This document shows positions 6,401 to 54,700 of a stretch of 64,000 nt of DNA, one piece after another. Made by a program: the position numbers and the translations under genes. A model generated the notes under the pieces. The model made no database searches. It saw nothing but the letters and a program-made list of their open reading frames with translations, and was not told the DNA's origin. Every line of letters begins with the position of its first letter. Within the stretch, counting starts at the first letter, position 1. The stretch is from Selaginella moellendorffii. Its lineage: Eukaryota; Plantae; Lycopodiophyta. Location: NCBI RefSeq assembly GCF_000143415.4, contig NW_003314262.1, positions 4,164,021-4,228,020 of the forward strand, written 5' to 3'.

Positions 6401-6659
6401 TTGACCATTCGATCTCCCGGGGGAACTAGAGCCAGCTTTTGAACACTTCACCAAATTACCCCGCTTGTCGGTCCGTATTCACTCTAACTTTGGACTTCCC
6501 AGTGGTTATCCCATCACCCAACACCTGGGTGCAGCCTTTCTGGGCCAAATTGGCCTTTCCTGGCCAAACTAGCTCCACTAGAGTCCTCCCCTTACTATAC
6601 TTTTGGAGCTCACCAAACCCCCCAGAGTCTGGGAGACGAACGCTTTGGGCTTTCACCCT

Positions 6660-10100: not shown

Positions 10101-10220
10101 CTATGCCATTCCCATTTCCATTAGGATTCCCTTGGCAAGAGGTTCTTATGAACCCACCAACATAACCTCAAGGTATCACACCTTGGCACATTTGGTGTCC
10201 TTATACCATCGGCTCCATGA

Positions 10221-13700: not shown

Positions 13701-13817
13701 TTATGGTTGTCAGATTCATATGGTAGTCAATTATCACCAAATAGAAGCTTAAAGTGTTCCACTTGAGTTATCATCATTGTCTTTTAATCTTCTAAAGAAG
13801 AAGATGGTATAAGGTGT

Positions 13818-13900
13818 AAATACATATATACATACATATATATGTATATATATATATATGTATATATATATACACACATATATCTGTGTGTATGTGTGTA
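13818..13900. repeat. (TA)n/(TG)n microsatellite
   Basis: Seen directly. Confidence 0.85.
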
Positions 13901-16079
13901 TTACTTTGCCTAGGTAATATACTAATCATAATACTATAGCATATGAACCATCTATTGAGGATTAAATCTAATCCATCCATTCTTGTATATAAGTAAGGGT
14001 TTAAACCTCAATTATGATATATATTCCTATATCCCGAGCACTCACAATTATAACTTTTTTGAATTTATCTTTGATTGAAATTTGGACTTGTCAACAATAT
14101 TTATATTATTGATATATGTATAATGGATTACTTAATATCTCCCTTGTGCTTTTGAAATCTATAAAAGTTATATATAAAACTTAGTACTTTTGCCAAAAGT
14201 ATTTAGCTATAATTTGCAAGACTACTTAGTTGCACTTTCCAAAGACACATTTATAAGGGATGATATGATACTAACAACTGTAATTTTAATATTTGTTGCA
14301 TTGTTATGCTTAATGTTATTGAGAAGTTACATATGAGAAGTTTTTATAAATATTTTAAAGAATACATATTTTAAATTTTCTTTTCTCATGTTAGAAAAAC
14401 TCTATACTATGATCCATTTATACTAACAATTAACCATACAAATCAAATTTGACTAAAGGTAGGTGTTCGAGATATATTGTTTTAATTAACTTAAACTATA
14501 AATTTTAGTTATATGTAAAAAAAATTAAATTTTATTTTTTAATGATTAAAGAATGCTTTTATAAACAGTTATGTATCTTATATTTGTGAGTGTTTTGGAT
14601 TTGGGACTAGATATATTAATCCCAAATGGATGGGTTATATATTATATTACTATAATATCATTTAGACAAAGTAATATAGATTTAATATGAAAAAGTGATA
14701 ATAAGTTAGGTGGATTATCTATTAGAAAATTATAAATTAATAGTTGAAGCTCCTATAGAACCACCAATGTATGACAAATTTTAAATGCTCAAATCAACCT
14801 TAAATCTATAATTATGAACAAAAGAAATGGACTTTTTAAGGCAATATAGTTGTAGAAAATTATAAATTATGTCTTTATATCTGCCTTGTTTTGGCCAACC
14901 TCTAAACCACTGTTAACTTAAAAACTCACAACCATTTCCCTTCAATTTGTAAGCCTCAATCAATATAAAAGTGGGACATATATACAGAATGGATGGATGA
15001 AATTCAGTTCCAAATGAATGGTTTATATATTATAACTATTTTACCTAAGTAGGGTGATTATAAACAACCTAAAAGAACTTGAGATATAATTTATTAGAGT
15101 TCAAATATAAAATTCAAACTTCATGAGGTTACCCATTCAAACTCAATGTCCCAATATTTATTCAAATGTAAAAATGCTTAACTTCAACTTCCCCCAGGAG
15201 CTTACATTATAGGGTCATATACATTCAAGGTCAATTAATAATTTTTTATATTATAATTATTGTAACATTGTTACAATAAAATTAATTTTTTTTAAAAATA
15301 AATTTATGAACTTAATTTAATTGTGAATACTATATATAAAATTATGTACAATTTCTTATATCATATAAAATTTAAAATTAAAATAAAGAATAATAAATTG
15401 CATATCCTTTTATGATTATCAGTCTGAAAATCTTATAATTTTAATTACTCAATTAATGATAAAGGATCTCATAGTTCCAACCAAGTGGTGGGAGGAGCTG
15501 CAGTGCAAGTGGTGGCTGAGAGAGTTCCTTATCTAGATATTGAGGATCGAGAGATAAATAATTTCCTATGCTAAAGGCTGGCAAGGAGTGATCATACAGC
15601 ACATTACTCTGTACTGCTGCTTTGGCTTTGCAATATAAAGGCAAAAATCACGATCTTTGAAGCACAAGACCTAGGAAGAATAAAAATATGTGCTCCATTG
15701 ATCTTCTTGCTAGCATATTTCACACTGCTGTCCCACCACCGAGTCGCCCAGCTGCCCCTGCTCACTAGCACGATCCCATTCCGGATTAATAAGTGTGTTA
15801 TTGCTTCCTCAACTTTTTGGCAAGGATGAATAGTCTTGGTAGCTAGCATTCTTCAGAGGAGTCTTCGCAAATCTTTTTGATTAATTAATTTAAACATAAG
15901 TTCAACCTTAACTTAAGATGGCAAAAAGAACAAACGGAGTCCAAATGAGGATGCTGCGCTGTTTTCCTTTTCAACCATTTGCTCGCGGCACTGCTCTTAG
16001 CGTCCACCACCACCAGTGGGAGTGCTCTAGAAAGTGAGCCGTAAGCTTCTGCAGCCCGCACATCTGCCGAGCACCCGGA

Positions 16080-16820
16080 CTCCTTCATTAGCCGAAGACT
16101 TCATAAACCCCGGCCAAGTTCCTCATGCACTCTGCCTTGCTCGACCGTGTAGCTACTTCCATTTCTCCTTGGATGAAGGAACTAATCAAAGTCCTGATGC
16201 CATTCGTTTGATAAGATAAAATGCTTGCACGACCCTGGCCGAGAAGAGGAGTCACCAAAGTGTTGTAGTTGACAGCAATGGGAACACAGCCTTGTCCAGC
16301 CATCTCCTCCAGGTCCACAGCATGGACCCGGACTCCTCCATTACCAGACGATGTTTCGAACGATCGAGCCTGTGAGCCTGGCACAGCCTGCCTGCGAGCT
16401 TTTTTCCCTTGTCTCCTTGCAAGTCACAGTATTTGGAGAAACTTCCGTCTCTGAAGACTTCAAGTTTCCTGCCTATGATGAAAACAGTCGGTGACGAGAA
16501 GATGTCGGCCAAACGTTGCAATACCATGCCAGCTTGATAGCTTGATGGCGTCCGGAGGTCAGGAGTATCTGTTAGAAGAACTGCACCTCATCCACTCTGC
16601 CTTGCTCGAACAGAGTGTGAATCTTAATATCTGGAGAAAGCCTGTGCCGTCCACAACTTTGAAAGCTCCTTCCAGGATGACCGCACTAGAGTGCCATTCG
16701 TCTGAGAGAAAAGGCTTCCTTGGCACGACCCTGGCTGAGGAGAGCATTCATCGAAGTGTTGTAGGCGACAGAATCAAGAGCACAGCCTTGTCCTGTCATA
16801 TCCTCCTGGAGGTAGTTTGT
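16080..16820 (-). pseudogene. PPR-repeat gene remnant, two related units
   Basis: LEEMAGQGCVPIAVNYNTLVTPLLGQGRA and MTGQGCALDSVAYNTSMNALLSQGRAKEAF match the PPR consensus. Frames are broken. Confidence 0.6.
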
Positions 16821-37834: not shown

Positions 37835-38695
37835 TCACGCGTTCGCTAGGTTCTCCTCCGGTTCCCATGTTGCTTCGCAGTGTGGAAATCCTTTCCACTT
37901 CACATGGAACTCTCTCACCTCGTGTCCTTGTCGCTTGCTCTTGCGCGCATTGAGGATGGCCTCGACTTCGTATTCCTCTTCCCCTTGGATAACCTCAGGT
38001 AAAGGTCTCACTTGGTCCTTGCGAAGCGGATCCTCAAAGTACGGCTTGAGTAAGTTCACGTGGAACACTAGGTGCATCTTCCCCATCTCTCGAGGAAGTC
38101 AGAGACGGTAAGCCACTTTACCGATTCGTGCCTCAATCTCGTAAAGCCCCGCGAACCTGCTTAAGGAACTCAAGATCAATTCATTTACAGGAATACATGC
38201 ATCTTTACCTTTGGGTCAACTTTCGGCTGAACCCACTTGGTAGTCTGAGGTTCTTGGTGTTCAGCCACACCTTCTCCCCAGCTTGGAACTCTATATCCCG
38301 ACGCTTTTGGTTTGCGTATTTGGTTTGCCTTTGTTGAGCCCGTTCCAAGGAATCCCTCACTAGATTCCAAATGCTGAGTCTTTCCGCCGTGAATGCCTCC
38401 ACTACGGGCAACTCTCCATGATACTCGGCCACGCCGAGTTCCACAGGACCTTCAATAGCTCGCCCATTGATGACTTCCCATGGACTCACCCCGATACTCG
38501 AATGTGGTGAGTTGTTATAACACATTTCCGCAAGTCCCAAATGACTTACCCAATCGGTCTGGTCTCCCGAGACATAGCATCGCAAATAATCCTCCAGCTG
38601 CCTATTCACCCTTTCCGTTTGTCCGTCTGTCAAGAAGTGTTAGTGCCAACAACTTGACTTAATACCCCATACCTGTCTGTGGGTGATAGGCTGTA
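37835..38695 (-). pseudogene. Gypsy integrase C-terminus plus chromodomain, with two introns
   Basis: TAYHPQT/DGQTERVN, a GPY/F-like region, and chromodomain YEVEAIL…VKWKGF…TWEPEENL. One in-frame stop. Confidence 0.9.
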
Positions 38696-39493
38696 AGCTC
38701 TATTTCGTTAAAGTGGGATTTATTCAGTAAAATGGGATTAGGTACAAATTTTCAAGTATTTGAAAATGACGTGAAATTATATGTTTTTTGTCTAGGGGCT
38801 AGACATATCTGGGGCATGGTGACTAGCGCGGTGACTTTGTGTCCAGACTGAGTCCATTTGGTTGTATAATAAATCTCATTGTCAAGGTGAACAAGCCGAA
38901 TCTGAAGCTAAAGAAGAGCGATGGCATTCGCGCACACACTATTTGTTTGTTCATTGAGCGTGTGGTGAGCTTTCCAAGATGAACGTCATTCCTATTAGCC
39001 AGACATATAACTTAATGGTGAGAACATTTAGATATTATTCAATGTTATCTTTTTCTAACGAATCTAATTGTGAAGGTGTAGCAAGAGGCATTGCTAGTCT
39101 GGAGAAGTCATTTAACTCATTTGACCCTTAGTGTATTTTCATGAAACTAAATAACATTCATATTATTAAGGAATTTCTCTAGTACCTTTTTTTTACGACA
39201 TAGAGGCTTGCATTTCTTTCAAAGGTGATTTAGTAAAAGGCCTGAGGGCACATGCCATTCTATTTCTCAGACCGGTATTAAGATATACTAGTGCAAAGGG
39301 AAAAAGGTATTTGGTGATCAAGTAAATGGCATGAGGGCACACGCCATTATAAGCCTAAGCGCTAGTGGACACCTCCTTTTTGGTGTCACGCCTCACGCCT
39401 CACGCCATCATGCCATGCCATCACGCCTCCTCTGATTCAGATTCGGATTGTTCACCTTGAAATAAAATACATTAGAAACTTAGTAAAGGAATA

Positions 39494-42400
39494 TTAATGA
39501 ATCTCACCTTGAACCCGGGTTATGAATGCTCTTGCTGCATCTCTTGCATGGTCTGGCAAGGTGATGGTGGCACTCTGCTTCCGCATCCAACCATGCACAA
39601 CATTATCCACCGATATGCTCATGCTGGGATCCCTTGGATTCAGCACCCATCTCTTTTCTAGGCAATCCTTCGTATATCCGGAACTTGGCTTGAACCACTC
39701 CACAGTTACATTGAAGGAGTTAGTTTCCGCGTCCTCCTCTGCATCAGTGATGCAGCGCCCCACCCATATCATTTGTTTTTATTACTGGGTCTGACAAGCA
39801 CGACCATTCCTTTGCAAACCTGTACTGGATTGAATGCTGAATCCGGCTTCTTGTTCCTCGGCCCACAATAGTGATCCTCAACATCGTTATCTGTCACTGC
39901 ATTTCCAGAGGACATTGTTCCGCTACTATCTGGTGCTCTGGGTTCTGGCCAAAAGGACTCTTCCAATTCTTCATATACAACCGGCCCATTTTGGATAGCA
40001 GATATAATCTTCTCCCAGTATTCGAGCAAAGGCTTGCACCTCTTAAAATAGGATTCTCCACCAAACACCAACCCCCTCTTCCAGAAGGCAATATGCTGTC
40101 TAATCCCGGCCACTATACTTTCCTGGTCTTTGAGTCCATCTGGGTGCATCGGCCGTGGGGAACCCTGAGGAATCATAGGTTCCCCAGTTATGGGATCTCT
40201 CTTGAAGAGTTCAATGCCATCCACTGGGAGCCACACTGTGTCCCATTCTCTCATCTTGTACCTCATCACTGGAGCACCGTCACGCATGCTGAAATGAAAC
40301 TGAAAAGGCTTGGAGTGGCCAATCAGCGTTTCGGATCCGTCCCTGATGTAGCCTCTTACAAACCCCTTAAAGTCTGGAACCTCTGTCACAAGTGCAGCTT
40401 CAACAGTGCCTTTGATGCAATTTTGGAATTCATCGTAGAGTTGTGGGAGGGTGAGGACATTGGATCGCCGGAGGGACTCTGCCAGGTGACTGAACATGGC
40501 ATCGACGTCTTCATGAGTGTGCCCAACCATGAGAAAGCCAAGTGTAACCGTTTCAAATATGCCTTTGGCAACAAGCATCGCCAAGTACGCGAAGACGTAC
40601 ATATTTTTGTTCTCACTGCCAGCATTGTCTGTTTGGAGCAGAAGATGGGGTGGAAGGCCACATCGGCCGCAAGAACTTCCTTGAGATTCTGCTTCGTTTG
40701 GATGAGGCTGTGCCAGCCTCATTGGAATGGCATGAGGCCTCACGTGATAACCCTACAATCTGACGGCCAACATATTCACTGGGATGGCATGGGGCCCCAT
40801 GCGATACTGCAAGCCTTTGCTCCTCCTCCAGCTGAACCCTGTATGGGGTTCGATCGACAAGGGCCTTATGCAAGGGTTGGCCGTTCAGCTCAGTTTGCGC
40901 ACTTTGCAGAGACCTTAAGTGTTTTGCTAGGGACGCAATCATCATGTTTGCACCCCCGCCACCCCATAGAGGTACAAAGAAGTTCCCATAGTTCTGGGCA
41001 CCATGCCCATGAGCGATTATGCCAAACAGAGACACAGGCAGCTGCATGGATGAAGAGATTGCCTTGGGGGCAGGATTGAGTCGAGGTAAGCACGTCTTTT
41101 TCTGGTCCATTTTGTCGTGGATGATGCAGAGGTAAGAGTCAGGTCTCTCCATGGAGAGAATCCTGTTATGATAATATGCAGTCCTACAGCTTCTTTGCTC
41201 GATGTTGTGGTTGAGCCGCCTTCTAACCAACGTCTCTCGCTCTTGAGCACTGCAAGAATTCTTCGACAAAGCCATTTTGATAGCAGTGCACTCGTCACAC
41301 TTTGAAAAGCTGGAGTACTTTCCTATACTCACATCCCTGAACCTGTTGCTCCACAATCTACTAAATCTAGATTGGCTCAGCTTCCTGTAGCCATTACTCT
41401 GGAGTTCCCGATTCACATCTTCCAATATGGCCCCCTTGGTATACATGGAAGGGAGAACTCGTTGGGTGTCTCGTGTTCCATCTTCCAAGAGGCGGGTTTT
41501 ATGTGGTTGCTGCTTGCTACATGTCTCAACAAACCTCTTGAAGATTGCCTCTCCATATACAACATGACCCCTAGTTTTGTGCGTATCGTCATTCCCATGG
41601 ACTGCCTGTTGAACCCTTTGTTCCTCGAACTTAGTTTTGATTCTGTAGAATGTGCTTCGAGGGACTCCATAAATGATTCTCCATGCCTTCATGCAGACCA
41701 AACCCCTCTGGAAGACCATGCCCCCCACCTGATGTTCTGAAGCATCAACAGATGACTGTAATGCCTCATACACAAAATTGCGAGCTGCCTTCCAGGACAA
41801 TGTCTTGTATCTTGCTCTCTCCTCTTCAATAGCATCCCAATCAGCATGTTGACAGCACCTCCTCTTGCAACAAGCAACTGTCGAGACCATTCGAACCTCC
41901 ATCGCCATTTTCTGCCTTTTCGGTTCGTTGCTCAGATCCCTTTGGCTGCGCTGTAGGAAGGTGTACTTTCTTTTCCCATGAAGAGATGTTCTGTCATCAG
42001 TTGTAGTGGTGTTTGATTGTGAATCCTTTACATTCTCAAACACTAAATGCCTCAATTTCCACCGCACAATGCTTCCAATAGTTAGACTGTTTTCTTCTGT
42101 GTCAACAACCTCTAAAATCGCAACTCCAATATCATCCCAGCCCAATTCTTGATTAGCAACCGCATCTCTTGGATCGACAACTGTGGCTAAGCCCTCAACT
42201 ACCACCTCCCCCTCGGGGTTGTTTAGAAACACCTTTGCCTGAATCCATGTAGCACGGTTCTTAAGATCCACGGAGGGAACATGCGTCGCACTTGCGCTGT
42301 CCCCAACATCTGCTTTCTTCTGCAGATTTTTCAAGGCAACAACAACATTTACCCCGACGACCATCTCTCCTCGTTCAATAGCGACCACATTCCCATCGAA

Positions 42401-42547
42401 GACAGTCTCTACTGATACAGCAGCATTGCCTTCCCCAAGCCTTTGACAGTGTATAACAAAGTTCTGATCCATAGACACAAGGGTCCCTTTTGCAACTCTC
42501 TTCCCACCATTCAAAATGTAAACTTTTTCCCCAACCCTGAAGGCCAT
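39494..42547 (-). CDS. Sola-like DDD transposase (~980 aa; one intron 40807-40708; probable 1-bp frameshift at ~39775)
   Basis: CCKRRCC, VCMKAWRIIYGV, KCDEC, HDKMDQ, QTDNAGSENKN and FLMVGHTHEDVDAMFS motifs. A phase-0 GT-AG join links ORFs 40613-42547 and 39769-40743. Confidence 0.8.
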
Positions 42548-45214
42548 TCTGAAAGTGCAGAAAAGAAGTTAAGACCATACAAAAAATGATTGGAGAATGG
42601 CCTAAATCATAACATACCAAATAGCATGAGGCCACATGCCATTATTCAAACATGTTATTGACACCCACGTGAAATTTCGCATTCACAAAATTGGCATGAG
42701 CCCTCATGCCATTAGTGGTACCACTAATGGCATGAGGCCTCATGCTATTTACTAGTCACACACACAAAAATATATACAGTTGCAGCAAGGCAAAAGGAAT
42801 ATGGCAATAGGCTAGCAGGGGCCAAAGATGGCATGAGGCCTCATGCCATCTTGATATACACACAGCTGCAGGCAAGTAAAAACATACATGACAATACGCT
42901 AGCCATGAAATTGCAAGGGCCCAAGATGGCATGTGGCCTCATGCCATTTCTAAATGTGGTCCTAAGCCATTCCATGGTGAACATACCAGGAAGCACAAGT
43001 GCCGAATATCAAGAGGAAGCGGTAGCCACACCAAAGACAGTGCCGCTCGCAACACCGCAACTACTCGTAGCGCCGCTCGCAACACCGCAACTGCTCGTAG
43101 CGCCGCTTGCACAAACTGCCACTCGCATAAACTGCCACTCGCAATGGCGCTCGCAATGCCGCAACCGCTTGTAGACGCATAAACCACAGCTCACAACGCC
43201 GCTTACACAAGCAGCGCTCACTGCGCTCAGCGGAACCAAGAACACCGCGCACAAAAATGATAGACCTAGGAATGAGTTCGAGAATTCAAAAATAACACAC
43301 GTTTGAATGTCACATCAAATCCTCTGACAAACCAGATCTTATGATTCCTCTGACAAATTTCAAACTGAGTAGCTTCTAGACTTTGCTGTCGGAGGTTGAA
43401 CTTTGTCACATCATGTCCTTGCCTCGATCCAGCTGTGCCATGTCAGTGATTCGAACTTTGCCATGCCGTGTCAGCGATCCGCGCCAAGATTATTCGCCGT
43501 GTAAAGGAATAATTATGCTGTGTGTGTACGTCCATTTATGGCAATATAAGGCCACACGCCATTCAAAGAATAATGCTAGTCGAGCATTTTTTGGTGCATT
43601 TTTGGGTTCAAAATTGCATGAGCCCACACGCTATAAAGTTTACCTGTACCAAAAATAGAAACAGCTTTATTTACTTGCGAATTTAAGTGGTTGAGGCATT
43701 TTTAAACTTACAAACACATGCCCTACTTACATTCCTTTGGTTGCTTAAAATTCAAAAATATATAAACCTTTCTTTTTGCATTTTCAATGTTTTCAATTAT
43801 GGTTTTTGATTTTCGCAAGACCAGCCTAGTAATCTATTTGCATCCCGTCATGTTTATAGCTAGCTTTCGTTTGTCCCCTTCGCTAGCCTGAGATACATCT
43901 GCTCGGCATCTGCCTCTTATAGCATTTGCCCAGAAAGGGCATCTTTCTTCACGCAGCATTTGCCACATGTTTAGGGTTTAGGGTTTAGTGTTTAGCAATT
44001 CAGTAGCTTGATAAACATGCAAATACAGAACTTGATGCAAAATCCTTCGATATGTTACAATGCCCCTAGGACTATAAACACATTTCAATAGAGAGGGTCC
44101 TTTCATTTTATAACTCCTTACGTAGATCTTGGTGAAACCAGAGTTAGTGAAGTTGGTTTCTTGTGATCCCGCATCTGATTGTGATGTCCCTTTGCAGTGT
44201 CGATGGAAAGGTCAATGCACACCAAACTGTAAAATCTTGGAGCAAAATAACAGTCAGATCTATGGCAAATGCCCCTGAAACATTGTAAGGCTTGTGTGGT
44301 CTCATGTGGTGTCCGATCGAGATGCTTCTTTGCAGGGTCATCAAGAAGGACATTGTATACCATTCTGTAAAATCTAGTTGCGATCTAACGGTTGGATCTC
44401 CAGGAAACTCAAAACAATCTCGCGCGTGTCAGAATATTCTAGGAATATACTCCTATGTGCTCCTGAAAATGGCATGCGGCCCCACGCCATTCAAGAGATA
44501 ACGCCAAATGATGCCGAGCATTTTTTGGTGCATGTTTTGGGATCAAAATTGCATAAGCCCACACGCTTGAACATCACATCAAATCCTCTGACAATTTATT
44601 TAGCTGAACATCTGGCATTTTTGGAAATACAAGATGCTTTGGAATATCCAATCATGCATAGTATAAATATAGCAAGGGTATTAAATGATATCCCAATCAT
44701 GATCTTTCTTTTGGATTTCACGTGCATGCAGTCCGAGGAATGATGACGTTGCGGATTGCTTTTGGATTTCACGTATACGCGTGGCGATCCAGAAATTAAT
44801 GGTGGCGCCCAAGTTCGAGGAATGATGACGTGGTGGGATTACCAACCATCGTGACATTTCGCGCGTGTGAGGTTAGGTTTTGCATTTTCCTTCGTACTCG
44901 CGCTCGCATCGCGCTCCCACTCGCGCTCCCACTTCTCTATAGGTTTCTCGTGTGCATCGGCGTCCACTTGCGCTTGCATCACACTCGCGCTCGCATCGCG
45001 CTCGTGTGCATCGGCGTCCACTTCAAGACACACCCAGTTTGTAACTTCGCCGCCAACTCCGCCGCCCACTCCACGCAGCCCACTTGGCGTCCCGGGAGAT
45101 TTCAGCGCCACTCTCCAACTGTAAGTGGTAGAGTAGCCTTGCTGCTACGATTTGCTGCACACACAGTGCACATTCGTCAGCGAGTCCGGTTGTCACGCCT
45201 CCATTCGGCTTCAA

Positions 45215-48200
45215 ATGGTAAGTCTTTTAGGCCAAGTAGAAAATGGCATGAGGCCACATGCCATTCAGTAGCAACATTGGCATGCACCGATTGGGCTCTC
45301 GAGTGCAGTCCGGTTACAGATGGCGTGTAGCCTCACGCCATCTTAGGATGCAGCCTCAAGACATCTGATGCAGTGGTGAATGGCGTGTGGCCTCACGTTA
45401 TTTCCAGTTGTTAGCTTTTCATCTGTCAGCTCTAATTGTTGTGCATTTCTGAACAGGCGAGGAATTGCGTTCTTCTTCTAGCCACTGTCAATGTGGATGC
45501 AGAGAAGGGGGAGGAGCTCACCAGTTGGACTTTTGGGATGGAAGGCGAGGATCTGAGGCTGTACAACACAGATGGTGGGAGAAAAGAATGCATGGGGATC
45601 CTCATCCAAGTGACAGACACTCCATGCAATTCCATGCAAGAATATGGACTGGCACTTGTGGTAGAGACAGCGTCTGCCTTCAAGATCCACCTTGCACATC
45701 CTAGCGGCTTCCCGGAGGGGGGCAGCGGCTATGAGGAATTCCTAGAGGGAGCTAGGGAGAGGTTGTCCAGGAGGCCCACAATTTCAAAGACGCTGCAGGT
45801 CTATGAAGATCACATGGAATCCATGGACTTCACCTACGGCGATGTTCAAAAACTATATTCCAACATTGAGCCGTTGAGAGTGAATCCAGTTCGCGAAGCG
45901 AAGGGGAAGGGGGTCGATCTGGAAACTACCCCGAAGCAGAAAAGGGTGGTCAAGCTCAAGCCGATGTCCGACTCTCCTCCAAAAAAGAAGCTACTCGGTG
46001 ATGCCATTGCCTCGGGTTTGAACACTACACCCACCAAAAAGAAGAGCCGCAAAGAGCAGAAAGAGCAAGAAGAGGCAGCAAAAATTGTCGCAGATAATAG
46101 TACTTATTACTATTCGAACAAAGTATATACAATCGACGTGAGCCGTATTGACATCCAAAGCAAATACAACCACAGGCTAGTATCTGATGAGTGGGTGGAG
46201 AAACTGAAGCAGAAGATGCTGGCAAGTCCAGTAACACCCGACATCGCAAACGTGATCCCCTACTACCGAACAATGAAGGGTGAGACGAGGTTTCCAGACT
46301 TGATCAATAGGAAGGTGTTGGACGATCAGAACATCCGGTTCTATGCCGTCTCCGGGCAGCATTCTAGCTTGGCGATGCAAGAGATAGTTGTGGATATTAT
46401 GGTGGGCGAGGAGGTGAAGAAAGTCTTCAAGACAAGAGTTGTCCGCCTGATAAAAGGCAACTTGCCCCTCCGATCTATCATATACATCTCCCACGCGCAG
46501 AATGTCAAGCAAGAAACGTGCTACAAATCGGGTTTGCACGAGACATTGGCACGAACACGGAAGCTCTAGGTTCAACTGAAGAAGCCACAAAAACCAGGAC
46601 AAGGACGTGCACTAGCAACTAGCGCCTGGCAGGTAAGCCTCGTTGTATGTGGCATAGCATGTGGCCTCACGCCATTTCCATTGCAGGAATTCTCAAGTCT
46701 TCTCTCGAAAACACTGGGGGTCAATGACACACTCAGCATCCATAACATTCTACTTGCGACAAAAGTTGTTTTTGACAAATGGGTAGATGTGCTGAGGAGG
46801 TACCATGATGGGGAGTTGCCAAACTCAATGGGTGTGGAGGACGGCCGGAAGCCCAATGATTTGAAGCTCAACGCTTTGCGTTTCTCGCGGTCTCTAGACG
46901 ACGACGACCTTCTGACAGTGGCTAATGCTCTTCTACGTGGTGAGGTAGTCTTCAACAAGACCAAAATGACTCCCGGCCATATTGTGACATACGAGGACTT
47001 GTGCACGACTCTGAGAGCTCGTGCGCTATTGAAGGATTGGATCTTCAAGCAAGTGGCCGTGGAGAGGGTGAGCATCGACACCACGCAAGAGATGATGGAA
47101 GCGCTGGATTTGTCAGTGCCTGAGGAACTGAAGACGGCTATGGAGCTTTTGAATCCAAAGAAAGCTCCAGGTGCAGCATGGGAAATGCTCAGCTGGGTCT
47201 TCAACGCAATAGCGGGTGGGTCACCTGCTTCCGACTCCAAGGGCAAATGCGTTGTCGAGTACAACTGCGGCGGACTATTCTTTCGAGCCGCACTACTCAA
47301 GGGTGTCCCGTGTGTTGCGGTGACAAACTCCATTGAAGAGGTGACTTCAATGGAGCATATAATTACAGTTGCCAAAGAAAAACAGTATCTTCTCTGCGAA
47401 CCTGGTGAGTACGCACTTTAAGTTTAAATGTTATCTCACAAGCTCTGTATGCAGGAGCGTGGCCACCCCTAGATGCTGAAACGGCGTTAACAGCTACTGT
47501 TGAAGATACCCATGTTGGGCTGAGCTCACAACCTGCACAAGGTAAGGTCACGTGAGGCCTCACGCCATTTTGATTATAGATCGTTGTGAATATTCAGACA
47601 TGAGGACTGAAAAGCGCACTGGTGGCACGTCGAAGAAGGACAAACAGACAAACAATAGGAAAAAAGGAGGTACAAATTATATTTGCAATGGCGTGTGGTC
47701 TCATGCCATTCCTTGCAGGAGACACTTCTTCAAAGGCAAAACAGGAAAGCACCAGCCAAGCTCAAACTGACAGTGGTCATAAAAAGCGAAAGCACGTTGG
47801 ACAGTCGTCGGGATCAGAGGCATTTGATTCGAAAAGGAAGAAGGGCAACGAAAAGATGATAGGTAATGCCTCGCGGTTATGGCGCGTGTGCTCATGCCAT
47901 TCATTGCAGATCAAGGGCTGAGTGAAAGCAGGCAGTCACCACCTCCTGACTCAGATTCCTATGGCGGACTCCCCTTCCCCAATCTCAATGGAGAGGTACA
48001 ATGGATGAGGGATGCTTTTCAAGTCAGGGCCACGTTTTTCTCATCTCGTCGTCTTCGAAGGGTGCAAGAACGTGCAGAAACCATGTTAAGACAGTCGGGT
48101 GAGGATACGGTCCTAGGTCACGCACTAAAACAGGCTATGGATGTCTTGTATTTTGAGATGGAGACTCGGCCAGATGATTTTCCCAAGATGGTCCTGGAAG

Positions 48201-51200
48201 AACAAGCCATCCAGCCTGAGCAGCCTATGGAAGAAATGCAGGAGGGGGATGAGGAGCCAGAGAAAGATAATGAGCAGGAAGAGCAAAAGGACGAAGAGGA
48301 GGACAAAGAAGAGGAGGACGAAGAAGAGGAGGATGAAGAGGACTTGGATGGTCCTCACAATGGTGACGATGTAGCGCACGTGGTTTTGACCCTTTATCCT
48401 ATGGTGATTTACCATAGGATAACACCACGAAGCGGAACCTAAACCCTCTTTGTGCCACGTGACAGATGCCACGTGTCACATGCCACGTGTCCATGCCACG
48501 TGTCCATAGGAACCCGAGGTTCAGGGCCTTGGGCCACTGAACGAAGGAACGGTGCCAAACTCCCAAGCATGACGCCAAGGAGTGATGGAACCGGACCACG
48601 GAGCAACTACCGAGCATATAGCCCAAGGAGCGAAGGGACAGGAGCCCGGAGCGACTTGGAACAGTCCTGGAGCAACCAGCATACCAATGCCAGGACCAGC
48701 ACGCAAAACGGAGCCAAACGGAGTCTGGCGCTATTTCGGCATACCGGTGGCCTAACGTGAGGATATGGGTACTCCACCAGCTAGCATGGAATGGAACTTG
48801 GGCTTAGACCCAAGCCGGACGCAGAACAAGGACAGGCACGCAAGCGGGAGCTAGACTATGCCTCAGGTTGGTCGGCCATGCCCGACCTACCCACTATCCC
48901 TACTATACATTTGGAACCCCCCATAGCCCCCCCCCCCTTGAGGAACACACGCTTTGGGCTTTCACCCCAAGCCTCCCTTAGTATCAGGAGTTAGTTTCTG
49001 GGACAAGCTCGAAACTTACTAAATATGGAATGTCCCTAGATTGCGAATTTGGACACGGGACGAACACCATTGTGTTCAGGCAGATCTCTACATTCCGTAG
49101 ATATGCCAAATGAGCAACACGGTAAGCTATCATGTAGCGATATTGAGGGACTAATCTCAATACGCGAGGGTTCTTGTCACTAGCAAGTGCAAGACAAAAC
49201 GAGATGGGAACTCCTTACCGGGCTAAGTATGCTTAGCTAATAACACGTAGGAATTCCGTCCTTATGCTCGTCCGGTCTAAGTACACTCGAAATGCCCAGT
49301 TAACTCCACTAGCACAAGAGGGACTGATAAAGGGTCCAGCAATACCGACCTCCTGCCATCGTGGCAGTAAGGTAAGAGTGTCCGTAAGGACTAGCCGACA
49401 GGTAACTTTCGATACCTGAAGTCACATTCGCGACAGACGATCACAATAACGACGACGACGATGATGACGACGATGGCCAGCCTGAGGTGGCTAAAGAGCA
49501 GCGGAGGAAGGTCATACAAGACAAACCATCAGGTAAATAATAGTACATCCATTCCTAACCTTTTACCATTTCTAACATTGTCCATGTAGGTCGTAGAGCA
49601 AATGGTAAGTAGAGATTATTCAGTTGAATTAAGATACAAATTCTAGCCTTTAGTGTCGAGGAAGGATAGTGCCAAGCAAGGGTCGAAACGTATGTCCAAT
49701 CCTTCAGAATCAACAGTGCGCCCAAGTGATATCGGTCCTAGTTCCTCAATAGCAGTTGATGGTAAATACAGTATAGTCGATTCAATGTGCTAATGAGTTT
49801 GTTTTTAGTAGCACGGGAGGATACCATCTCAATCGAAGGGAGATATTTGGACATGCATATGGATCCGCCAGTGGACTCTACTTGCCTGCAAGAGTCATCA
49901 GAGCTGGTGGAGGCTACTATCCATATCAACGCCAAGCAAGCTGACCACGCTCCACTTGATGCTGCCCATACCACTGAGTCAATCTTGTCCACGTATCCAA
50001 CTGATGGTGACCAGGCGCCATTGGACCCGCATGAGGCCGCCCTAGCCGCCGAGCCGGTCGTATCCTCATTTCCAACGGACTCAACATGTGCCCAATCGTC
50101 TGACTACGCGCCGTTGGAACCTCCCTACACCGCCCCTGCTGCCTGTTCGGTCATGTCCACTTTGCCAACGGAGGCACCAGCTGAAATGGCGTGTGATCAC
50201 ACGCCATCGGAACCACCCCATGCCACTGTTGAGCCAGTTGTACTAGAGTCTACAGCTAAAATGGCATGTGCCCACACGCCATCGGATGCGATTGACCCCA
50301 CATTGCAGAGGAGAGTATTTCCGCCCTTCACGTTTCCTCGACCAAAACCCTCTCAACGACCATCGGGAGCACCATTTGCTAATATTGTAGATGGTAAAAT
50401 TGACTTGTACCATTTTTTATGCTGATGCATTTCATTTCAGAGTCACGGCGAAGGTACTGTATCATTTTTGATCTGAACAGTGTCCTTTTCTCCCATGAGC
50501 ATGGCTCGTCCTCGAATGTCATTGCACCCTCCAAAGCCTGCGGTCGCAAGTTGGTCAAAAGAGACAGATTCACATTAATCACACGGGAGAAACTGCGGGA
50601 TCTAATAATGACCATGCGACACTTAAAACAGAGGGCCGGGTTCAATTTGCAATTGGGAGTTTGGACATCCATGATGCGCCACAATGCATTAACGTTGCTA
50701 CAGATGATGCACGATCAGACGCGAGTAATATTACCATTTGACTTTCTCCTAATGCAGGAGGATTGCTTGACTATGGTCCATGTGAGGGGTAGCAAGCCCA
50801 TCTTCGTCAAGCCAGAGGCTGTAGTGATGAACCGGACTGCTAGCTCAAGTGAAATCCTCATCATCGATGACTCGCCGATTAAAACTGCAGCGAACACGCA
50901 CACATATGCAGTGCACCCCATCTCTTGCAGTATGGAAACTAGGGAGAAGAAACCGTATGTTCTGGGGGACCTTGCAAAACGGCTTGGAGCGATGGTGATA
51001 GTGAACCGGCCAGTCCAGGAGGTGGTTGCAGAAATCAACCAAATGGCAGATGGAACGGTATATCAGAAGCCATTTGATCAGACAAACACCAGTCATCATT
51101 TATGGCATGTATATTGTCTAGCCAAGCACTATCCGCATCTCCATAATCTGCTCAACCGGATGGGTTCTTCGACCACTGAACATGAGCGTGGACGTATTAG

Positions 51201-51291
51201 AGAAGAGATGGCATTACTATTGGGTTTAAATCCTGATTGGAGAGTGATGAAATTCCAAGATTATTGTATAGGCGTTGGAGGCAAAAAATAA
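45215..51291 (+). CDS. Transposon cargo gene, ~11 exons, ~1,430 aa: ParB/Srx-like domain, acidic linker, FCP1/NIF-like HAD domain. Disrupted by a TAG and a solo LTR
   Basis: ATG at 45215, then in-frame GT-AG introns (45218-45456, 46633-46686, 47405-47454, 47542-47597, 47670-47718, 47863-47909, three at ~49533-49808, and ~50394-50440). Motifs HRLVSDEWVEKL…FYAVSGQHSSLA and IIFDLNSVL…VWTS…QEDC…KPIFVK…LIIDDSPIK. Confidence 0.7.
48370..49435 (-). mobile_element. Solo LTR (third family) inside the cargo gene
   Basis: TGTAGCGC…TCGCGACA with TSD GACGA (48365-48369 and 49436-49440). Removing it restores the frame (…HNGDDHNNDDDD…). It contains the GCTTTGGGCTTTCACCC motif shared with the other LTRs; orientation is inferred from that motif. 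Confidence 0.85.
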
Positions 51292-51745
51292 CAGTCTGAG
51301 ATGGCATGTATTTATTTAAAAATGTAACTTATTATGGCATGGGGTTCCATGCCATTGTATTAATATTAAAAGACAATTCTTTGAGAGGATTTGCATTATA
51401 CTAGAAGTGTTACAGCATGTTATTGGAAGTCTACGAAGTTGTTTTATTAATAAGGGGAAAGTAAAGATTGAATGGGGACTTGGGCTCCACCTAGACTTGG
51501 AGCAACTGAGCCAATATTAAAAGGATGGAAAGAAATTGGACGATGATGACAAGGAGAAGAGAGAGGTGAAGCAGTGGCAGGGGGAGGAGAAGTGATTGAG
51601 TAGACATTTCCTTGTTTAAAATAAAATGGCATGTGCCTCAATGCAGTTGAATTTTGTTATATTTATATACTATATAAAGGTTTGGAAACCTTATTTTACA
51701 AGTGGGATAATGACAATTCCCACTTTAACGAAATAAAGCTACTAA

Positions 51746-54700
51746 GCTGAATTTCAACTTGGTGCGATACTGTTCCAGGAGAGTCCTCCAGAACCTACTG
51801 GTGAAGATCTTATCTCGATCTGAGATGATCTCTTTCGGTCTTCCCCGCACTCGAACCACTTGTTCGAAGAACAGCTTTGCCACACCTTCCGCATCCACCT
51901 CTGTTGTGGTGGGTATGAAGTGTGCCATTTTCGAAAATCGGTCCACCACCACGAATATCGCATCAAACCCCTCGCTTGGGGGGAGTCCCGTGATGAAGTC
52001 CATCGTAAGACATTTCCACGGACGATCTGGAATTGGGATGCTTTGCAACAAGCCCCCACTAGCCTTAGTCACGGCTTTTACCTGCTGACATGTTGGACAT
52101 GTCTTTACATAGTCTTGGACGTCCTTAGCCATATCTGGCCAATGGTACTTCCTTTTGAGTAAGCCCATCGTCTTGGGCACTCCACCGTGTCCCGCAAGAG
52201 GTCCGTCATGACACTCTTCTAAGGCCACCTTCCTTAGTTCCCCTTTTGGAATATACACCCTCGTTTGCTTGTAATAAATGAGTCCGTTGTGTTCCGCATA
52301 GCCCGTTTTCTCTTCCGTTGGCAGCTCACCTCTCTGGTGAGCTTCCCGCGCCTCTAGATTCCTCAGCAACACTTCTTGTGCTAGACCATCATTCTCATAT
52401 GCTGTCCGCACATCGTCCCAGAAGGTTGCTGTTGCGCTGGATATTGCCAACCTCAAGCTCACTTTTTGACTTAGCGCATCCGCCACGATGTTGCTCTTCC
52501 CAGGCTTGTACAGAATTTCGCAATCAAACTCGGCCAAGGCATTGGCCCACCGACCTTGTTTCCCTCTTAGGTCGGGCTGTGACAAGAAGTGTTTTGTTGC
52601 CACATTGTCCGTGTAAACCTTGAAGTGTCTCCCAAGGTAGTGTCGCCATTCCTTGAGCGCCTTGACCACCGCAAACAATTCCTTCTCGTGGGCAGGCCAC
52701 TTACGTTGAGCCTTGTCCAGCTTCTTCGAGAAGAACGCTACCGGATGGTTGTCTTGCTTCAAAACTGCGCCCAACGCAAAGTCCAAAGCATCCGTTTCTA
52801 CCTCAAAGTCCTTACAAAAGTCTGGTAATGCCAATACGGGAGCCTTCCTCAACTTCCCTTTGAGGTGGACGAATGCCGCCTCGCATTCCGCTGTCCACAC
52901 CATCTTCCCTTTTCCTGTTTGGTCCGTTAAGGGCAGGGCTATTCTCGAATAGTGTCTGATAAACTTTCGATAGTAGTTGCATAGCCCTAGGAATGCCCTC
53001 AACTCGTGTACATTGGATGGTCGCTCCCATTCTTGGATCGCTTGGACCTTCTCTGGGTCCACCTTGAGCCCGTCCTGGCCCACCACATGCCCGAGAAACT
53101 TTACCTCTTGTTGAGCAAAGTCACATTTGCTCTCTTTAGCATATAGCTTGTGTTCCCTTAGTTTCTCAAACACTTTCGCCAAGTGTTCGGCATGCTCCTC
53201 TAGCGTCTCGCTATAGATCAGGATGTCGTCGATATAGACGACCACGAAGTGATCCAGATAGGGTACAAAGATGTGGTTCATTAGCGCTGAAAATGTTGCC
53301 GGCGCATTACATAGCCCGAAGGGCATCACCAGAAACTCAAAGCTCCCATACCTCGTTCGACAGGTTGTCTTCTCGACATCTTCCTCGGCTACCCTGATCT
53401 AGTAGTATCCTGACCTTAGGTCAATCCTCGAGAAGTATTTTGCCTTTCCCAACCTATCGAACAGGTCCTCAATCCTTGGCAAAGGGTACTTGTTCTTCTT
53501 TGTATACTTGTTGAGCAACCGGTAGTCTATGCACATGCGCATAGATCCATCTTTCTTTTTCACAAATAACACCGGCGCCCCATACGGTGACTTGCTCAAC
53601 CTAACATACCCTTTGTCCACCAACTCCTCTAGTTGGCACTTGAGCTCCTTGAGTTCTTTTTCGTTCAAACGATAAGGGGGACGAACCACTGCCTCAGCAC
53701 CCTCGACCAGCTCAATCTTATGTTCTATTAGTTGTGCTAGGGGTAGCCCCGCCAGTAGCTCCTCCAGCATGGTATCCTGGAATTGGTTCAACACCCGCTG
53801 GATCACTAAAGGTATTTCTTCCATTCCTGTCTTTTTGTCACTCTTCACCGAGAGTAAGCACAAAAAGGCCGCCTTAGTTCCTTTAGTGAGTTGTCCTCTC
53901 GTGGACACCAAGTTTAAGTAGGAATCTTTGGCCTTGCTTTGCCCTACCTTTAGATCTTGGGCCTCCACCCTAGATTTTCTTCCTTGGGCATTCGCCAGTA
54001 CCACAAGGTTTCTACCTTGTCCATGCAGGGCTACCACGAATCGATTGAACCAGTCCATTCCGAAGATCACGTCAAATCCCGCCATGTCCAACACGGTGAA
54101 ATCTATGTCCACCTTCCAAGTCCCCACTTCGACTCTCGCTTGTCGAAGTACCTCATCGGTGCTTTGGCTACCTTGAACAAACTCTATAGTCCTTGGTTCG
54201 CCTAGCCGCTGCACCGTTAGTCCGGCTTGCCGGACTATGTCTGCAGCCACAAAATTATCCAAAGCACCCGTGTCAATAAGGATCTTAACAAAGCTACCTT
54301 CGAGCTTCCCTCGGAGGGCTAGTAGATGTCGCGAACGACTCTCTACCAAAGTTGCTCGTGTAATGAGTAACTTTGAGTTAGGGACTGGATCACATACCTC
54401 AGTTTGGACTTCACCCAACTTGATGGCCATATTGGCTCTGGCCTTCTTCGGGTAGGGACATTCCCTCGAGAAGTGTCCCGCTTCACCGCAGTTGTAGCAT
54501 ATGTTGTTTCCCACGCTGCTATACGACTTGACCTTTTTATCCGTGGGTTTGTCTCTTTTCGCTTGACTCCCCCATGTACTCGCTCACTGGCCACCGGATC
54601 TGCCTTTCCGGAACCCCGAGGACTCATTCTTAGAGAAACTCTTCTTGAATTTCCCTCTGCTAAACGTTCCCCTTAGTTTGGCCCCTTTGCTAAATGTGGA

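What the first reader, a model, noticed from the sequence alone, without database searches (positions are those of the whole stretch)
38696..51740. Plant DNA transposon encoding a ParB-like protein and carrying ~25 parS-like palindromes
Seen: a TIR-bounded 13 kb unit with two divergent intron-containing genes. A 22-bp palindrome (ATGGCRTGWGGCCWCAYGCCAT) recurs ~25 times from end to end, and I did not notice it outside the TIRs. Known: bacterial ParB CTPases load at multiple palindromic parS sites and spread along or bridge DNA. Inference: the cargo protein (or the transposase) binds these sites to coat the element, for example for synapsis, anti-silencing or local chromatin control. Functionally this would resemble VANC/VANDAL motif targeting, but with a ParB-fold protein. 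I know of no description of this arrangement.
Basis: partly seen in the sequence, partly recalled or inferred. Interest (0 to 1): 0.92.

Follow-up and report, generated by a model that had tools for sequence, protein, structure and literature searches.

The report
Sola1 transposon with ParB-like gene, palindromes
This is a decayed 13-kb Sola1-type DNA transposon whose second gene encodes a ParB-fold protein and which is studded with its own 22-bp palindrome; the pairing recurs with different palindromes in distant relatives, but the same kind of arrangement was already described in algal transposons in 2025.

Summary
A 26-nt TIR pair bounds a 13,045-bp insertion that splits the integrase of a chromovirus gypsy element. 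The 22-bp palindrome occurs 20-21 times, plus about 8 half-sites. All lie inside the element and none in the other 51 kb.

The left gene is a Sola1-superfamily transposase (Pfam DUF7869). The right gene encodes a ParB/Srx-fold domain, a degenerate N6/N4-methylase-like domain, an acidic stretch and a NIF/FCP1-like domain with DLN in place of DxD. The ParB fold rests on an AF2 model of a relative (VIA-align Z 9.8 to ParB).

This copy is dead: premature stop, frameshift, 606-bp deletion, C>T decay, almost no RNA.

Relatives in the liverwort Calypogeia fissa and in a metagenomic eukaryote have the same accessory gene. Each has its own palindrome, in arrays upstream of that gene and in its introns. 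This favours cognate binding by an element-encoded protein.

The canonical CTP motif GxxRxxA is absent, so a true ParB clamp is not supported.

The arrangement is not undescribed. An Ectocarpus Sola1 element carries a ParB-methylase gene, and Bostrychia Plavaka PAG3 sits beside inverted-repeat arrays.

Earlier first-stage notes of this scan describe other copies in this genome.

Verdict: a new variant of a known kind. Binding is untested.

The parts
38696..38721 (+). Left terminal inverted repeat. An AARTGGGAT repeat lies inside it and again at 38730.
51715..51740 (-). Right terminal inverted repeat. AAGTGGGAT lies at 51700.
39494..42547 (-). Sola1-type transposase gene, Pfam DUF7869 core in 39769-40743. 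About 96-98% identical to P0005 and P0019, and 31-44% identical to 1,074-aa homologues. There is a frameshift or stop near 39770 in this copy.
40708..40837 (-). 130-nt GT-AG, phase-0 intron of the transposase gene. It holds two palindromes (40727, 40784).
   Evidence: read from the sequence
39237..39421 (.). Palindromes and half-sites in the left subterminal / transposase 3' region.
42621..42947 (.). Cluster of five palindromes directly upstream of the transposase start codon.
43546..44560 (.). Intergenic palindromes (43613, 44469) and partial sites, each inside a duplicated unit of about 90 bp.
45218..45456 (+). Putative first intron of the accessory gene (ATG|GTAAGT ... AACAG|), with three palindromes (45243, 45320, 45380). 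It matches intron 1 of the Calypogeia copy, which has five.
   Evidence: inference from the sequence
45215..51291 (+). Accessory (cargo) gene: N-terminal region, ParB/Srx-like domain, helical region, methylase-like Rossmann motif I, acidic stretch, NIF-like domain.
46063..46566 (+). ParB/Srx-like domain (motif RFYAVSGQHSSLA). It ends in a premature TAG at 46567-46569, where another copy has G at 46568 (TGG).
46632..46686 (+). Intron of about 55 nt at a position conserved in relatives (after W-K/Q-V). It consists almost only of one palindrome (46654-46675).
47239..47379 (+). Methylase-like motif I region, homologous to VLDFFSGG of the relatives. Another copy has 606 extra bases at 47115/47116.
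47547..47900 (.). Three palindromes in the intron that follows the methylase-like exon.
48365..49435 (.). 1,071-bp segment absent from another copy, flanked by GACGAT. Probably a nested repeat or an indel.
50186..50282 (.). Two palindromes just upstream of the NIF-like exon.
50455..50901 (+). NIF/FCP1-like HAD domain (PF03031, 25.3 bits, cut-off 21.8). The catalytic motif reads FDLNS rather than DxDxT.
51301..51633 (.). One degenerate palindrome (51334) and half-sites in the right subterminal region.
51741..53329 (-). Upstream part of the interrupted chromovirus gypsy pol gene (RT, RNaseH, H2C2, rve).
37835..38633 (-). Downstream part of the interrupted gypsy pol gene (integrase C-terminal part, chromodomain).

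Best explanation
What it is: window 38696-51740 is a dead copy of an autonomous-type Sola1-superfamily cut-and-paste transposon, inserted into the integrase of a chromovirus.

Genes: one gene encodes the transposase. The divergent second gene encodes an accessory protein with four parts:
- an N-terminal ParB/Srx-fold domain of the DGQHR-like kind;
- a degenerate beta-class N6/N4-methylase-like domain;
- an acidic stretch;
- a NIF/FCP1-like (RNA polymerase II CTD-phosphatase-like) domain with D-x-N at the active site.

Proposed mechanism: the 22-bp palindromes are cognate binding sites for an element-encoded protein, most likely a dimer of the accessory protein. Sites cluster in the shared promoter region, the introns and the UTRs, so the protein would mark the whole element and only that element.

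Tethering would bring the methylase-like and CTD-phosphatase-like modules to the element's own chromatin. This could control its transcription or silencing. It could also compact the 13-kb DNA so that the distant ends can pair.

Shown: element anatomy, superfamily, the ParB/Srx fold of the family, motif specificity, conservation of the gene-palindrome pairing across lineages, and the decay of this copy.

Inferred: which protein binds the sites, and what the tethered domains do.
For: Anatomy and specificity.

Sola1 membership:
- Pfam DUF7869, E 3e-40.
- The catalytic core Q-x-DN...ENKN-x-Y...TVTL-x-F-x-MVGHTH...D..FS matches the curated Sola1-1_Ec32 transposase printed in the Ectocarpus supplement, about 28 of 57 residues by eye.

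ParB fold:
- phmmer against 1.8 billion proteins links the window domain to a small eukaryotic family (E 6.5e-5 to 7.5e-4).
- AF2 of a family member with 12 sequences gives pLDDT 81.5.
- VIA-align gives Z 9.8 to ParB, and essentially all of the top ~45 Foldseek PDB hits are ParB/Noc/KorB/PadC/Srx/SbnI.
- AlphaFold DB hits include 'DNA methylase N-4/N-6', 'DGQHR' and 'ParB/Sulfiredoxin' proteins.

Conserved pairing:
- Calypogeia fissa locus L007 has the same architecture: divergent DUF7869 transposase, ParB-like domain, weak N6_N4_Mtase match, NIF domain. It has 36 copies of TCRAGAYSRTCTYGA against 0.46 expected, all inside its 13.7-kb element.
- Metagenomic locus L004 has 38 copies of RCRACGCNGCGTYGY against 2.9 expected, in 26-bp-period arrays upstream of the gene and in its introns.
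- Each motif was found essentially only in its own lineage: single <=1-mismatch matches of the L007 motif in L002 and L004 are the only exceptions.
- The intron after the ParB exon carries the lineage's palindrome in 5 of 6 loci.

Separate end signals:
- L007 has a distinct 22-bp-period subterminal repeat, TGGACWTTTGG, 6 copies at the left end and 4 at the right.
- The TIRs are unrelated to the palindromes.

Site placement: 0 of 21 sites (10 clusters) fall in homology-supported coding sequence, which makes up 45% of the element. P is about 0.003 counted by cluster.

Literature proposes the same idea for algal elements.
Against: - No binding data exist.
- In canonical ParB, sequence recognition comes from the HTH domain after the N-domain. 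An HTH was not demonstrated here; the model match covers only the N-domain.
- The ParB-like domain has no Pfam hit, and no PDB hit by sequence.
- The fold was modelled on a relative that is 23% identical to the window's domain. The model of the window's own piece failed (pLDDT 42).
- The transposase also co-varies with the motif, so comparative data alone cannot say which protein binds.
- Both 'effector' domains lack canonical catalytic residues: no [DNS]PP[YFW] motif, and DLN instead of DxD. Their activity is doubtful.
- The AT-rich relative L003 shows no palindromes in its 2 kb.
- The TSD could not be resolved (TAAG or TAAGCT possible).
Confidence: 0.6

Rival explanations
1. The palindromes are transposase-binding sites, like the subterminal repeats of CACTA, Ac or Mutator elements. 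They would help assemble the transpososome, and the accessory protein would do something unrelated.
For: Sites occur near both ends (39237-39421; 51301-51633). The transposase co-varies with the motif as much as the accessory gene does. Palindromes suit a dimeric DNA binder of any kind.
Against: Most sites are internal, up to about 6 kb from either end. In the relatives the densest arrays lie directly upstream of the accessory gene and inside its introns. The TIRs share nothing with the palindrome. The Calypogeia element has a separate, strictly subterminal repeat array of the usual transposase-site kind. In red-algal Plavaka elements, which belong to a different transposase superfamily, inverted-repeat arrays also accompany the ParB-like gene.
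Confidence: 0.2
2. The system is a true ParB/parS analogue. The protein binds CTP, loads at the palindromes as a clamp and slides or spreads along the element, as bacterial ParB, Noc and KorB do.
For: The best structural matches are CTP/CDP-bound ParB N-domains (Z 9.2-9.8). There are many dispersed palindromic sites, as with multiple parS.
Against: The CTP-contacting box GxxRxxA is replaced by SGQHSxxAA in all family members, so the arginines are absent. No ParB_N Pfam match was found. No C-terminal dimerisation domain or ParA partner was seen. The annotated AlphaFold DB matches with the lowest E-values are 'DGQHR domain' proteins.
Confidence: 0.1
3. The palindromes are not protein-binding sites. 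They would be neutral or structural repeats (hairpin or cruciform formers, small-RNA sources, or replication-slippage products) that pile up in non-coding parts of the element.
For: They avoid coding sequence, as any neutral insertion would. In the relatives they form regular tandem arrays, which slippage can expand.
Against: Three unrelated sequences in three lineages are all near-perfect palindromes of 15-22 bp. They sit at equivalent places: upstream of the accessory gene, in intron 1, and in the intron after the ParB exon. In the window they are dispersed singly, not only in tandem. Stems of 7-10 bp are too short for Dicer-type precursors (general knowledge).
Confidence: 0.1

Closest known systems
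Sola1-1_Ec32 of the brown alga Ectocarpus (PMC12477816, Genome Biol 2025)
   Same: Same transposase superfamily: the catalytic-core motifs match. [quoted passage not shown] The authors already propose that it binds and epigenetically modifies its own element.
   Different: The Ectocarpus element is 21.5 kb with 282-bp TIRs. In the passages of the paper that I read (term searches only), no palindrome array and no NIF/FCP1 domain is mentioned. Here the methylase-like domain lacks the catalytic motif, a NIF-like domain is fused, and the palindromes span the element, introns included. Direct alignment of the two accessory proteins was not possible.
PAG3 of Plavaka transposons in the red alga Bostrychia moritziana (bioRxiv 10.1101/2025.02.11.637652; Curr Biol 2025)
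   Same: A transposon accessory protein with an N-terminal ParB-like domain fused to a nucleic-acid or chromatin-modifying domain. Arrays of inverted repeats lie next to the gene. The self-binding hypothesis is stated.
   Different: Different transposase superfamily (Plavaka / CACTA-related). The effector is a 2OG oxygenase rather than methylase-like plus NIF-like domains. The arrays are described as tandem and adjacent to the gene, not dispersed through introns and UTRs.
Chlorophyte and chytrid ParB-HTH + Dam-type N6A methylases (Iyer, Zhang and Aravind, PMC4738411)
   Same: A ParB-type DNA-binding module fused N-terminally to a DNA methylase of prokaryotic or phage origin, in eukaryotes.
   Different: Those are group-2 Dam-type enzymes with intact motifs. 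In the passages I read they are not described with cognate repeats or a transposon context. Here the weak similarity is to PF01555 (beta-class), and only around motif I.
Bacterial ParB / Noc / KorB with parS, NBS or OB sites
   Same: Same N-domain fold (Z 7.7-9.8). Multiple palindromic sites, often close to the protein's own gene.
   Different: No GxxRxxA CTP box, no ParA partner, no demonstrated HTH or C-terminal dimerisation domain. The context is a eukaryotic transposon, and the protein is fused to other domains.
VANC / VANDAL anti-silencing system of Arabidopsis (from general knowledge, not checked here)
   Same: A transposon-encoded accessory protein that recognises short motifs spread over its own family, giving family-specific control.
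   Different: VANC is not a ParB-fold protein. VANDAL elements are Mutator-like. That function (loss of DNA methylation) is demonstrated experimentally; nothing is demonstrated here.

Membership tests
Sola1 group of the Sola superfamily of DNA transposons | Transposase catalytic core homologous to curated Sola1 transposases | tested here: met
   Window ORF 39769-40743(-) has ...QTDNAGSENKNMY...TVTLGFLMVGHTHEDVD..FS. The Sola1-1_Ec32 transposase (Ectocarpus supplement) has ...QVDNTVAENKNNY...TVTLCFMMVGHTHIQID..FS. The comparison is by eye, about half the residues identical over 57. Pfam DUF7869, E 3e-40.
Sola1 group of the Sola superfamily of DNA transposons | 4-bp target-site duplication (4 bp given for Sola1-1_Ec32 in the supplement; for Sola in general, from my memory of Bao et al. 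2009) | tested here: inconclusive
   TAAG (or TAAGCT) is present on both sides, but offset by 4 nt from the right TIR. No empty site was available. In L007 the flanks CATA/TGTG differ only by transitions.
Sola1 group of the Sola superfamily of DNA transposons | Terminal inverted repeats | tested here: met
   26 nt, 92% complementary. The L007 termini are similar in form, GTAGTCATTAAAACTGGA.
ParB/Srx fold superfamily | N-domain fold | tested here: met
   AF2 model of family member P0004:291-492, pLDDT 81.5. VIA-align Z 9.8, rmsd 2.3 A over 95 residues to M. xanthus ParB. Essentially all of the top ~45 Foldseek PDB hits are ParB/Noc/KorB/PadC/Srx/SbnI. The window domain joins this family by phmmer, E 6.5e-5 in 1.8 billion proteins. 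Its own model was poor.
Canonical ParB CTPase clamps (ParB, Noc, KorB) | CTP-binding box GxxRxxA (GERRxRA) | tested here: not met
   The aligned position reads SGQHS-x-x-AA in nearly all family members (P0003 has DGQHT); no arginines.
Canonical ParB CTPase clamps (ParB, Noc, KorB) | HTH domain that reads the palindrome | tested here: inconclusive
   Structural matches cover only the N-domain (chain residues about 37-132). The helical exon that follows (46687 onward) was not modelled.
Canonical ParB CTPase clamps (ParB, Noc, KorB) | ParA-type partner | tested here: not met
   Only two genes lie in the element, and neither has an ATPase domain.
Beta-class N6/N4 DNA methyltransferases (PF01555) | AdoMet motif I, FxGxG | tested here: met
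   VLDFFSGGQ in L007 and VLDFFSGGM in L004. The window has the degenerate VVEYNCGGL.
Beta-class N6/N4 DNA methyltransferases (PF01555) | Catalytic motif IV, [DNS]PP[YFW], and a Pfam score above the gathering cut-off | tested here: not met
   No such motif in the L007 or L004 exons. PF01555 scores 20.7 bits against a cut-off of 26.7, on the motif I region only. In the window, the region where this motif would be expected coincides with the 606-bp deletion (inference).
NIF / FCP1 / SCP CTD-phosphatase-like HAD domain (PF03031) | Profile match above the gathering cut-off | tested here: met
   25.3 bits against 21.8 in the window. 23.1 and 23.6 bits in L007.
NIF / FCP1 / SCP CTD-phosphatase-like HAD domain (PF03031) | Catalytic DxDx(T/V) motif | tested here: not met
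   FDLNS in the window, and LDLNK in L007. In another copy the only change listed at this motif (A>G at 50479) turns the following Ser into Gly, giving FDLNG and leaving Asn in place. The second Asp is therefore Asn in both lineages, which makes it a conserved change and not decay.
ParB-like accessory genes of giant algal transposons (Sola1-1_Ec32 gene; Plavaka PAG3) | An opposite-strand or adjacent accessory gene with an N-terminal ParB-like domain plus a modifying domain, accompanied by inverted-repeat arrays | tested here: met
   Architecture. Arrays. Published descriptions.

The most novel reading that the evidence does not exclude
A eukaryotic transposon lineage found in at least two plant-type genomes (this window's genome and the liverwort Calypogeia fissa), with likely kin in algae, carries a self-addressing system. 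A ParB-fold accessory protein would recognise a fast-evolving, family-specific palindrome seeded through the element's promoter region, introns and UTRs. It would thereby deliver a CTD-phosphatase-like module and a methylase-derived module to the element's own chromatin. This would be a family-private switch for transcription, silencing escape or end-pairing, convergent with VANC/VANDAL but built from a prokaryotic partition fold.
Probability: 0.35. Interest if true: 0.75.

Novelty: new variant of a known kind. Interest (0 to 1): 0.58.

Why it matters
How large DNA transposons tell self from non-self, and how they escape or tune host silencing, is known in mechanism for very few families.

The idea that ParB-like accessory proteins bind repeats in their own element was raised in 2025 for algal elements, from single genomes.

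This window and its relatives add three things:
- A comparative test: three lineages with three different palindromes at equivalent positions.
- Presence in at least one land plant, the liverwort Calypogeia fissa.
- A different effector set: a methylase-like domain without the catalytic motif, and a CTD-phosphatase-like domain with a conserved D-x-N.

The motifs are short and defined, so the hypothesis can be tested directly by DAP-seq or EMSA.

It is not a new category, and this particular copy is a pseudogene.

Tried and rejected
- The word-indexed protein search with the 377-aa ParB ORF found nothing. The length filter probably excludes full-length relatives.
- The exhaustive phmmer search found only 4 weak relatives.
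- The AF2 model of the window's own ParB piece, with 5 sequences, failed (pLDDT 42) and was not used.
- Profile searches against PDB sequences gave no ParB match. The designer-PPR hits (E 1e-8) are repeat artefacts with no significant single stretch.
- Pfam at E<=10 gave no ParB_N or DUF3723 hit for any family member.
- RNA evidence for splicing failed. Two 2026 RNA-seq runs gave 3 and 0 reads, and the older 'RNA?' contigs are unspliced and look like DNA. Intron calls therefore rest on GT-AG ends, reading frame and homology.
- An empty site for the TSD was sought in the window and not found.
- The first look-up for the Calypogeia protein failed. A cluster sibling worked.
- Considered and rejected: chance (shuffles give 0); a genome-wide motif (0 of 51 kb outside); mini-MITE insertions (the sites are 22 bp with no flanks of their own).

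Full report
**1. Observation**

The 22-bp palindrome ATGGCRTGWGGCCWCAYGCCAT has 20 matches at <=3 mismatches, all between 39237 and 50282, against 0 in shuffles. One more degenerate site lies at 51334.

The half-site ATGGCRTG occurs 38 times. 37 are inside the element and one is outside, with 3.6 expected for the window. The 51 kb outside the element has no full site.

A 26-nt TIR pair, 92% complementary, lies at 38696-38721 and 51715-51740.

The unit is a clean nested insertion. The sequence to its right encodes RT, RNaseH, H2C2 and an rve core that breaks off at profile position 97/102 exactly at the junction. The sequence to its left continues the integrase and ends in a chromodomain.

The TSD could not be fixed. 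TAAG or TAAGCT is possible but is offset on the right side, and no empty site was found in the window.

**2. The two genes**

*Transposase, minus strand, 42547->39494.*
- It has Pfam DUF7869 (E 3e-40).
- It is about 96-98% identical to P0005 and P0019, which are probably from the same species. It is 31-44% identical to 1,074-aa homologues.
- The two large ORFs are joined in frame by a 130-nt GT-AG intron (40837-40708), and both palindromes of that region sit in it (read from the sequence).
- The catalytic core matches the curated Sola1-1_Ec32 transposase printed in the Ectocarpus supplement: Q-x-DN...ENKN-x-Y...TVTL-x-F-x-MVGHTH...D..FS. According to the same supplement, that family's best BLAST hit is Repbase Sola1-1_PPa. 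The element is therefore a Sola1.

*Accessory gene, plus strand, about 45215-51291.* From homology with relatives it has:
- an N-terminal region;
- a ParB-like domain (46063-46566);
- a helical exon;
- a Rossmann motif I region;
- an acidic stretch;
- a NIF/FCP1-like domain (PF03031, above the cut-off).

**3. This copy is dead and silent**

Another copy, seen as contigs of a public run, differs from this one in several ways:
- It has G where the window has A at 46568, so the window's TAG stop is TGG there.
- It has 606 extra bases at 47115/47116.
- It lacks 48365-49435.

The differences between the copies are dominated by window-T/other-C and window-A/other-G. This points to C>T decay in the window copy, as expected for methylated DNA. 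The R/Y positions of the palindrome are the same kind of CpG/TpG alternatives.

A frameshift or stop sits near 39770. Two recent RNA-seq runs gave 3 and 0 reads.

**4. Is the domain ParB-like?**

By sequence alone, no. There is no Pfam hit, and no PDB hit by sequence.

An exhaustive phmmer search of 1.8 billion proteins found four weak relatives (E 6.5e-5 to 7.5e-4). A profile search added more, including a protein of the liverwort Calypogeia fissa. The family shares IPV..I..PPA..CYR, P-x-VADLVPY and F-x-AISGQHS..AAK.

The AF2 model of the window's own piece was unusable (pLDDT 42). A family member modelled with 12 sequences gave pLDDT 81.5 and pTM 0.77.
- Foldseek against the PDB returned almost only ParB, Noc, KorB, PadC, sulfiredoxin and SbnI among the top ~45 hits.
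- VIA-align gave Z 9.8, rmsd 2.3 A over 95 residues, to the CTP-binding N-domain of M. xanthus ParB.
- AlphaFold DB clusters gave E down to 4e-7. Hits include proteins named 'DNA methylase N-4/N-6 domain', 'DGQHR domain' and 'ParB/Sulfiredoxin domain'.

The fold claim holds for the family. It extends to the window by homology, at 23% identity to the modelled member.

The ParB CTP box GxxRxxA reads SGQHSxxAA, so membership among CTP clamps is not supported. The structural match covers only the N-domain, and an HTH was not shown.

**5. The other domains**

In the intact Calypogeia exon, PF01555 (N6_N4_Mtase) scores 20.7 bits, below the cut-off, and only over motif I (VLDFFSGGQ). No [DNS]PP[YFW] motif exists in that exon or in L004.

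The NIF domain has D-L-N in the window and in Calypogeia; in another copy of the window's family the only change listed at the motif (A>G at 50479) leaves that Asn in place. This is a conserved loss of the second catalytic Asp.

Both modules may be binding domains or altered enzymes. That is inference.

**6. Relatives: the co-variation test**

*Calypogeia fissa locus L007* holds a 13.7-kb element with the same layout.
- The transposase is at 3972-7367(-). The accessory gene runs from 10001 to 16513(+) and has ParB-like, methylase-like and NIF parts.
- Its palindrome, TCRAGAYSRTCTYGA, occurs 36 times against 0.46 expected. All copies lie inside the element: a dense array between the two genes, five in intron 1, three in the intron after the ParB exon, and more further downstream.
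- It also has a separate subterminal repeat, TGGACWTTTGG, with a 22-bp period: six copies at the left end and four at the right. This looks like the usual transposase-site array.

*Metagenomic eukaryotic contig L004* has RCRACGCNGCGTYGY 38 times against 2.9 expected. The copies form 26-bp-period arrays upstream of the ParB-like gene and in its introns.

Short contigs L001 and L006, of the Calypogeia-like subfamily, carry the TCGAGAC-type site in the intron after the ParB exon.

In a cross-count, each motif is essentially confined to its own lineage; the only exceptions are single one-mismatch matches of the L007 motif in L002 and L004.

In the window, none of the 21 sites (10 clusters) lies in homology-supported coding sequence, which is 45% of the element. 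The ~55-nt intron at the conserved position after the ParB exon is little more than one palindrome.

**7. Mechanism**

The best reading is that the palindromes are cognate sites for an element-encoded dimeric DNA binder, and that this binder is more likely the accessory protein than the transposase. The reasons:
- The sites are mostly internal.
- They are densest at the accessory gene.
- They are unrelated to the TIRs.
- In Calypogeia they coexist with a distinct terminal repeat system.
- Inverted-repeat arrays also accompany a ParB-like gene in Plavaka elements, which have a different transposase.

What tethering achieves is inferred. It could be local control of Pol II or chromatin through the NIF-like and methylase-like modules, or compaction that helps the ends pair.

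**8. Comparison with the literature**

- PMC12477816 describes the 21.5-kb Sola1-1_Ec32. It has an opposite-strand 1,104-aa ParB-like + N4C/N6A-methylase protein, and the paper suggests that such proteins bind and modify their own transposon.
- The Bostrychia genome paper describes Plavaka PAG3 (ParB-like + 2OG oxygenase) with adjacent tandem arrays of inverted repeats, and states the same hypothesis.
- PMC4738411 lists ParB-HTH + Dam fusions in chlorophytes and chytrids.

New here:
- a land-plant lineage, the liverwort Calypogeia fissa, by its record; the window's own species was not identified, and the only plant-type cue I saw in it is a short TTTAGGG-type run at about 43958;
- the NIF-like fusion;
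- the loss of the methylase catalytic motif;
- palindromes through introns and UTRs;
- lineage-specific motifs at equivalent positions.

Earlier first-stage notes of this scan describe several other copies of this family in the same genome. I did not inspect them.

**9. Verdict**

The feature is real and the fold claim is upheld. Cognate binding is plausible and supported by comparison across lineages, but it is untested. The strict ParB/parS clamp analogy is not supported. This is a new variant of a recently described kind.

Noticed in passing
window 48365-49435: A 1,071-bp segment is absent from another copy of the element. It is flanked by the 6-bp repeat GACGAT and is covered at high depth by many short contigs of run X2. 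It is probably a nested repeat or a microhomology indel.
   Followed up: partly
window 47115/47116: Another copy has 606 extra in-frame bases here, beginning with a coding-looking stretch. The window copy has therefore lost about 202 codons of the methylase-like region.
   Followed up: partly
window 45301-51300 versus another copy: Differences between the copies are strongly biased to window-T/other-C and window-A/other-G (for example 36 T>C and 19 A>G against a handful of others). This indicates C>T decay of the window copy. The R/Y positions of the palindrome are CpG/TpG alternatives.
   Followed up: partly
window 43958-43985: A short run of the plant-type telomere repeat (TTTAGGG-like, three units) lies in the intergenic region between the two genes.
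   Followed up: no
window 43546-43634 and 44469-44560: A unit of about 90 bp (palindrome, then ...GAGCATTTTTTGGTGCAT...AAAATTGCATRAGCCCACACGCT) is duplicated in the intergenic region. Some sites therefore spread as parts of a longer repeat.
   Followed up: no
window 38634-38695: The gypsy integrase next to the insertion carries an extra piece of about 48 bp flanked by ACAGAC, which breaks the TDGQTE motif region. Another first-stage note reads it as an intron. I could not make it splice in frame.
   Followed up: partly
Atlas search of window 45436-46569, residues 200-377: The protein-language-model search put fungal DUF3723 clusters first (score 0.96, 196 shared features). DUF3723 is the conserved accessory gene of Starship giant transposons, of unknown function. 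The model of that hit resembles ParB_N proteins. No Pfam DUF3723 hit was found by sequence, so this is a lead that Starship DUF3723 may be a ParB-like accessory protein too.
   Followed up: partly
L007 3560-3679 and 17134-17210: The Calypogeia element has subterminal arrays of TGGACWTTTGG with a 22-bp period, six copies on the left and four on the right, all on the same strand. They are distinct from the internal palindromes.
   Followed up: yes
L007 7754-8084 and 16674-16878: A 164-nt inverted repeat (88% complementary) brackets the whole accessory-gene region inside the Calypogeia element, as if that region were a module of its own.
   Followed up: no
window 42523-42547 region and L007 3972-7367: The N-terminus of both transposases gives a weak match to Pfam Transposase_23 (TNP1/EN/SPM): E 0.042 in the window and 1.7e-4 in L007.
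   Followed up: no
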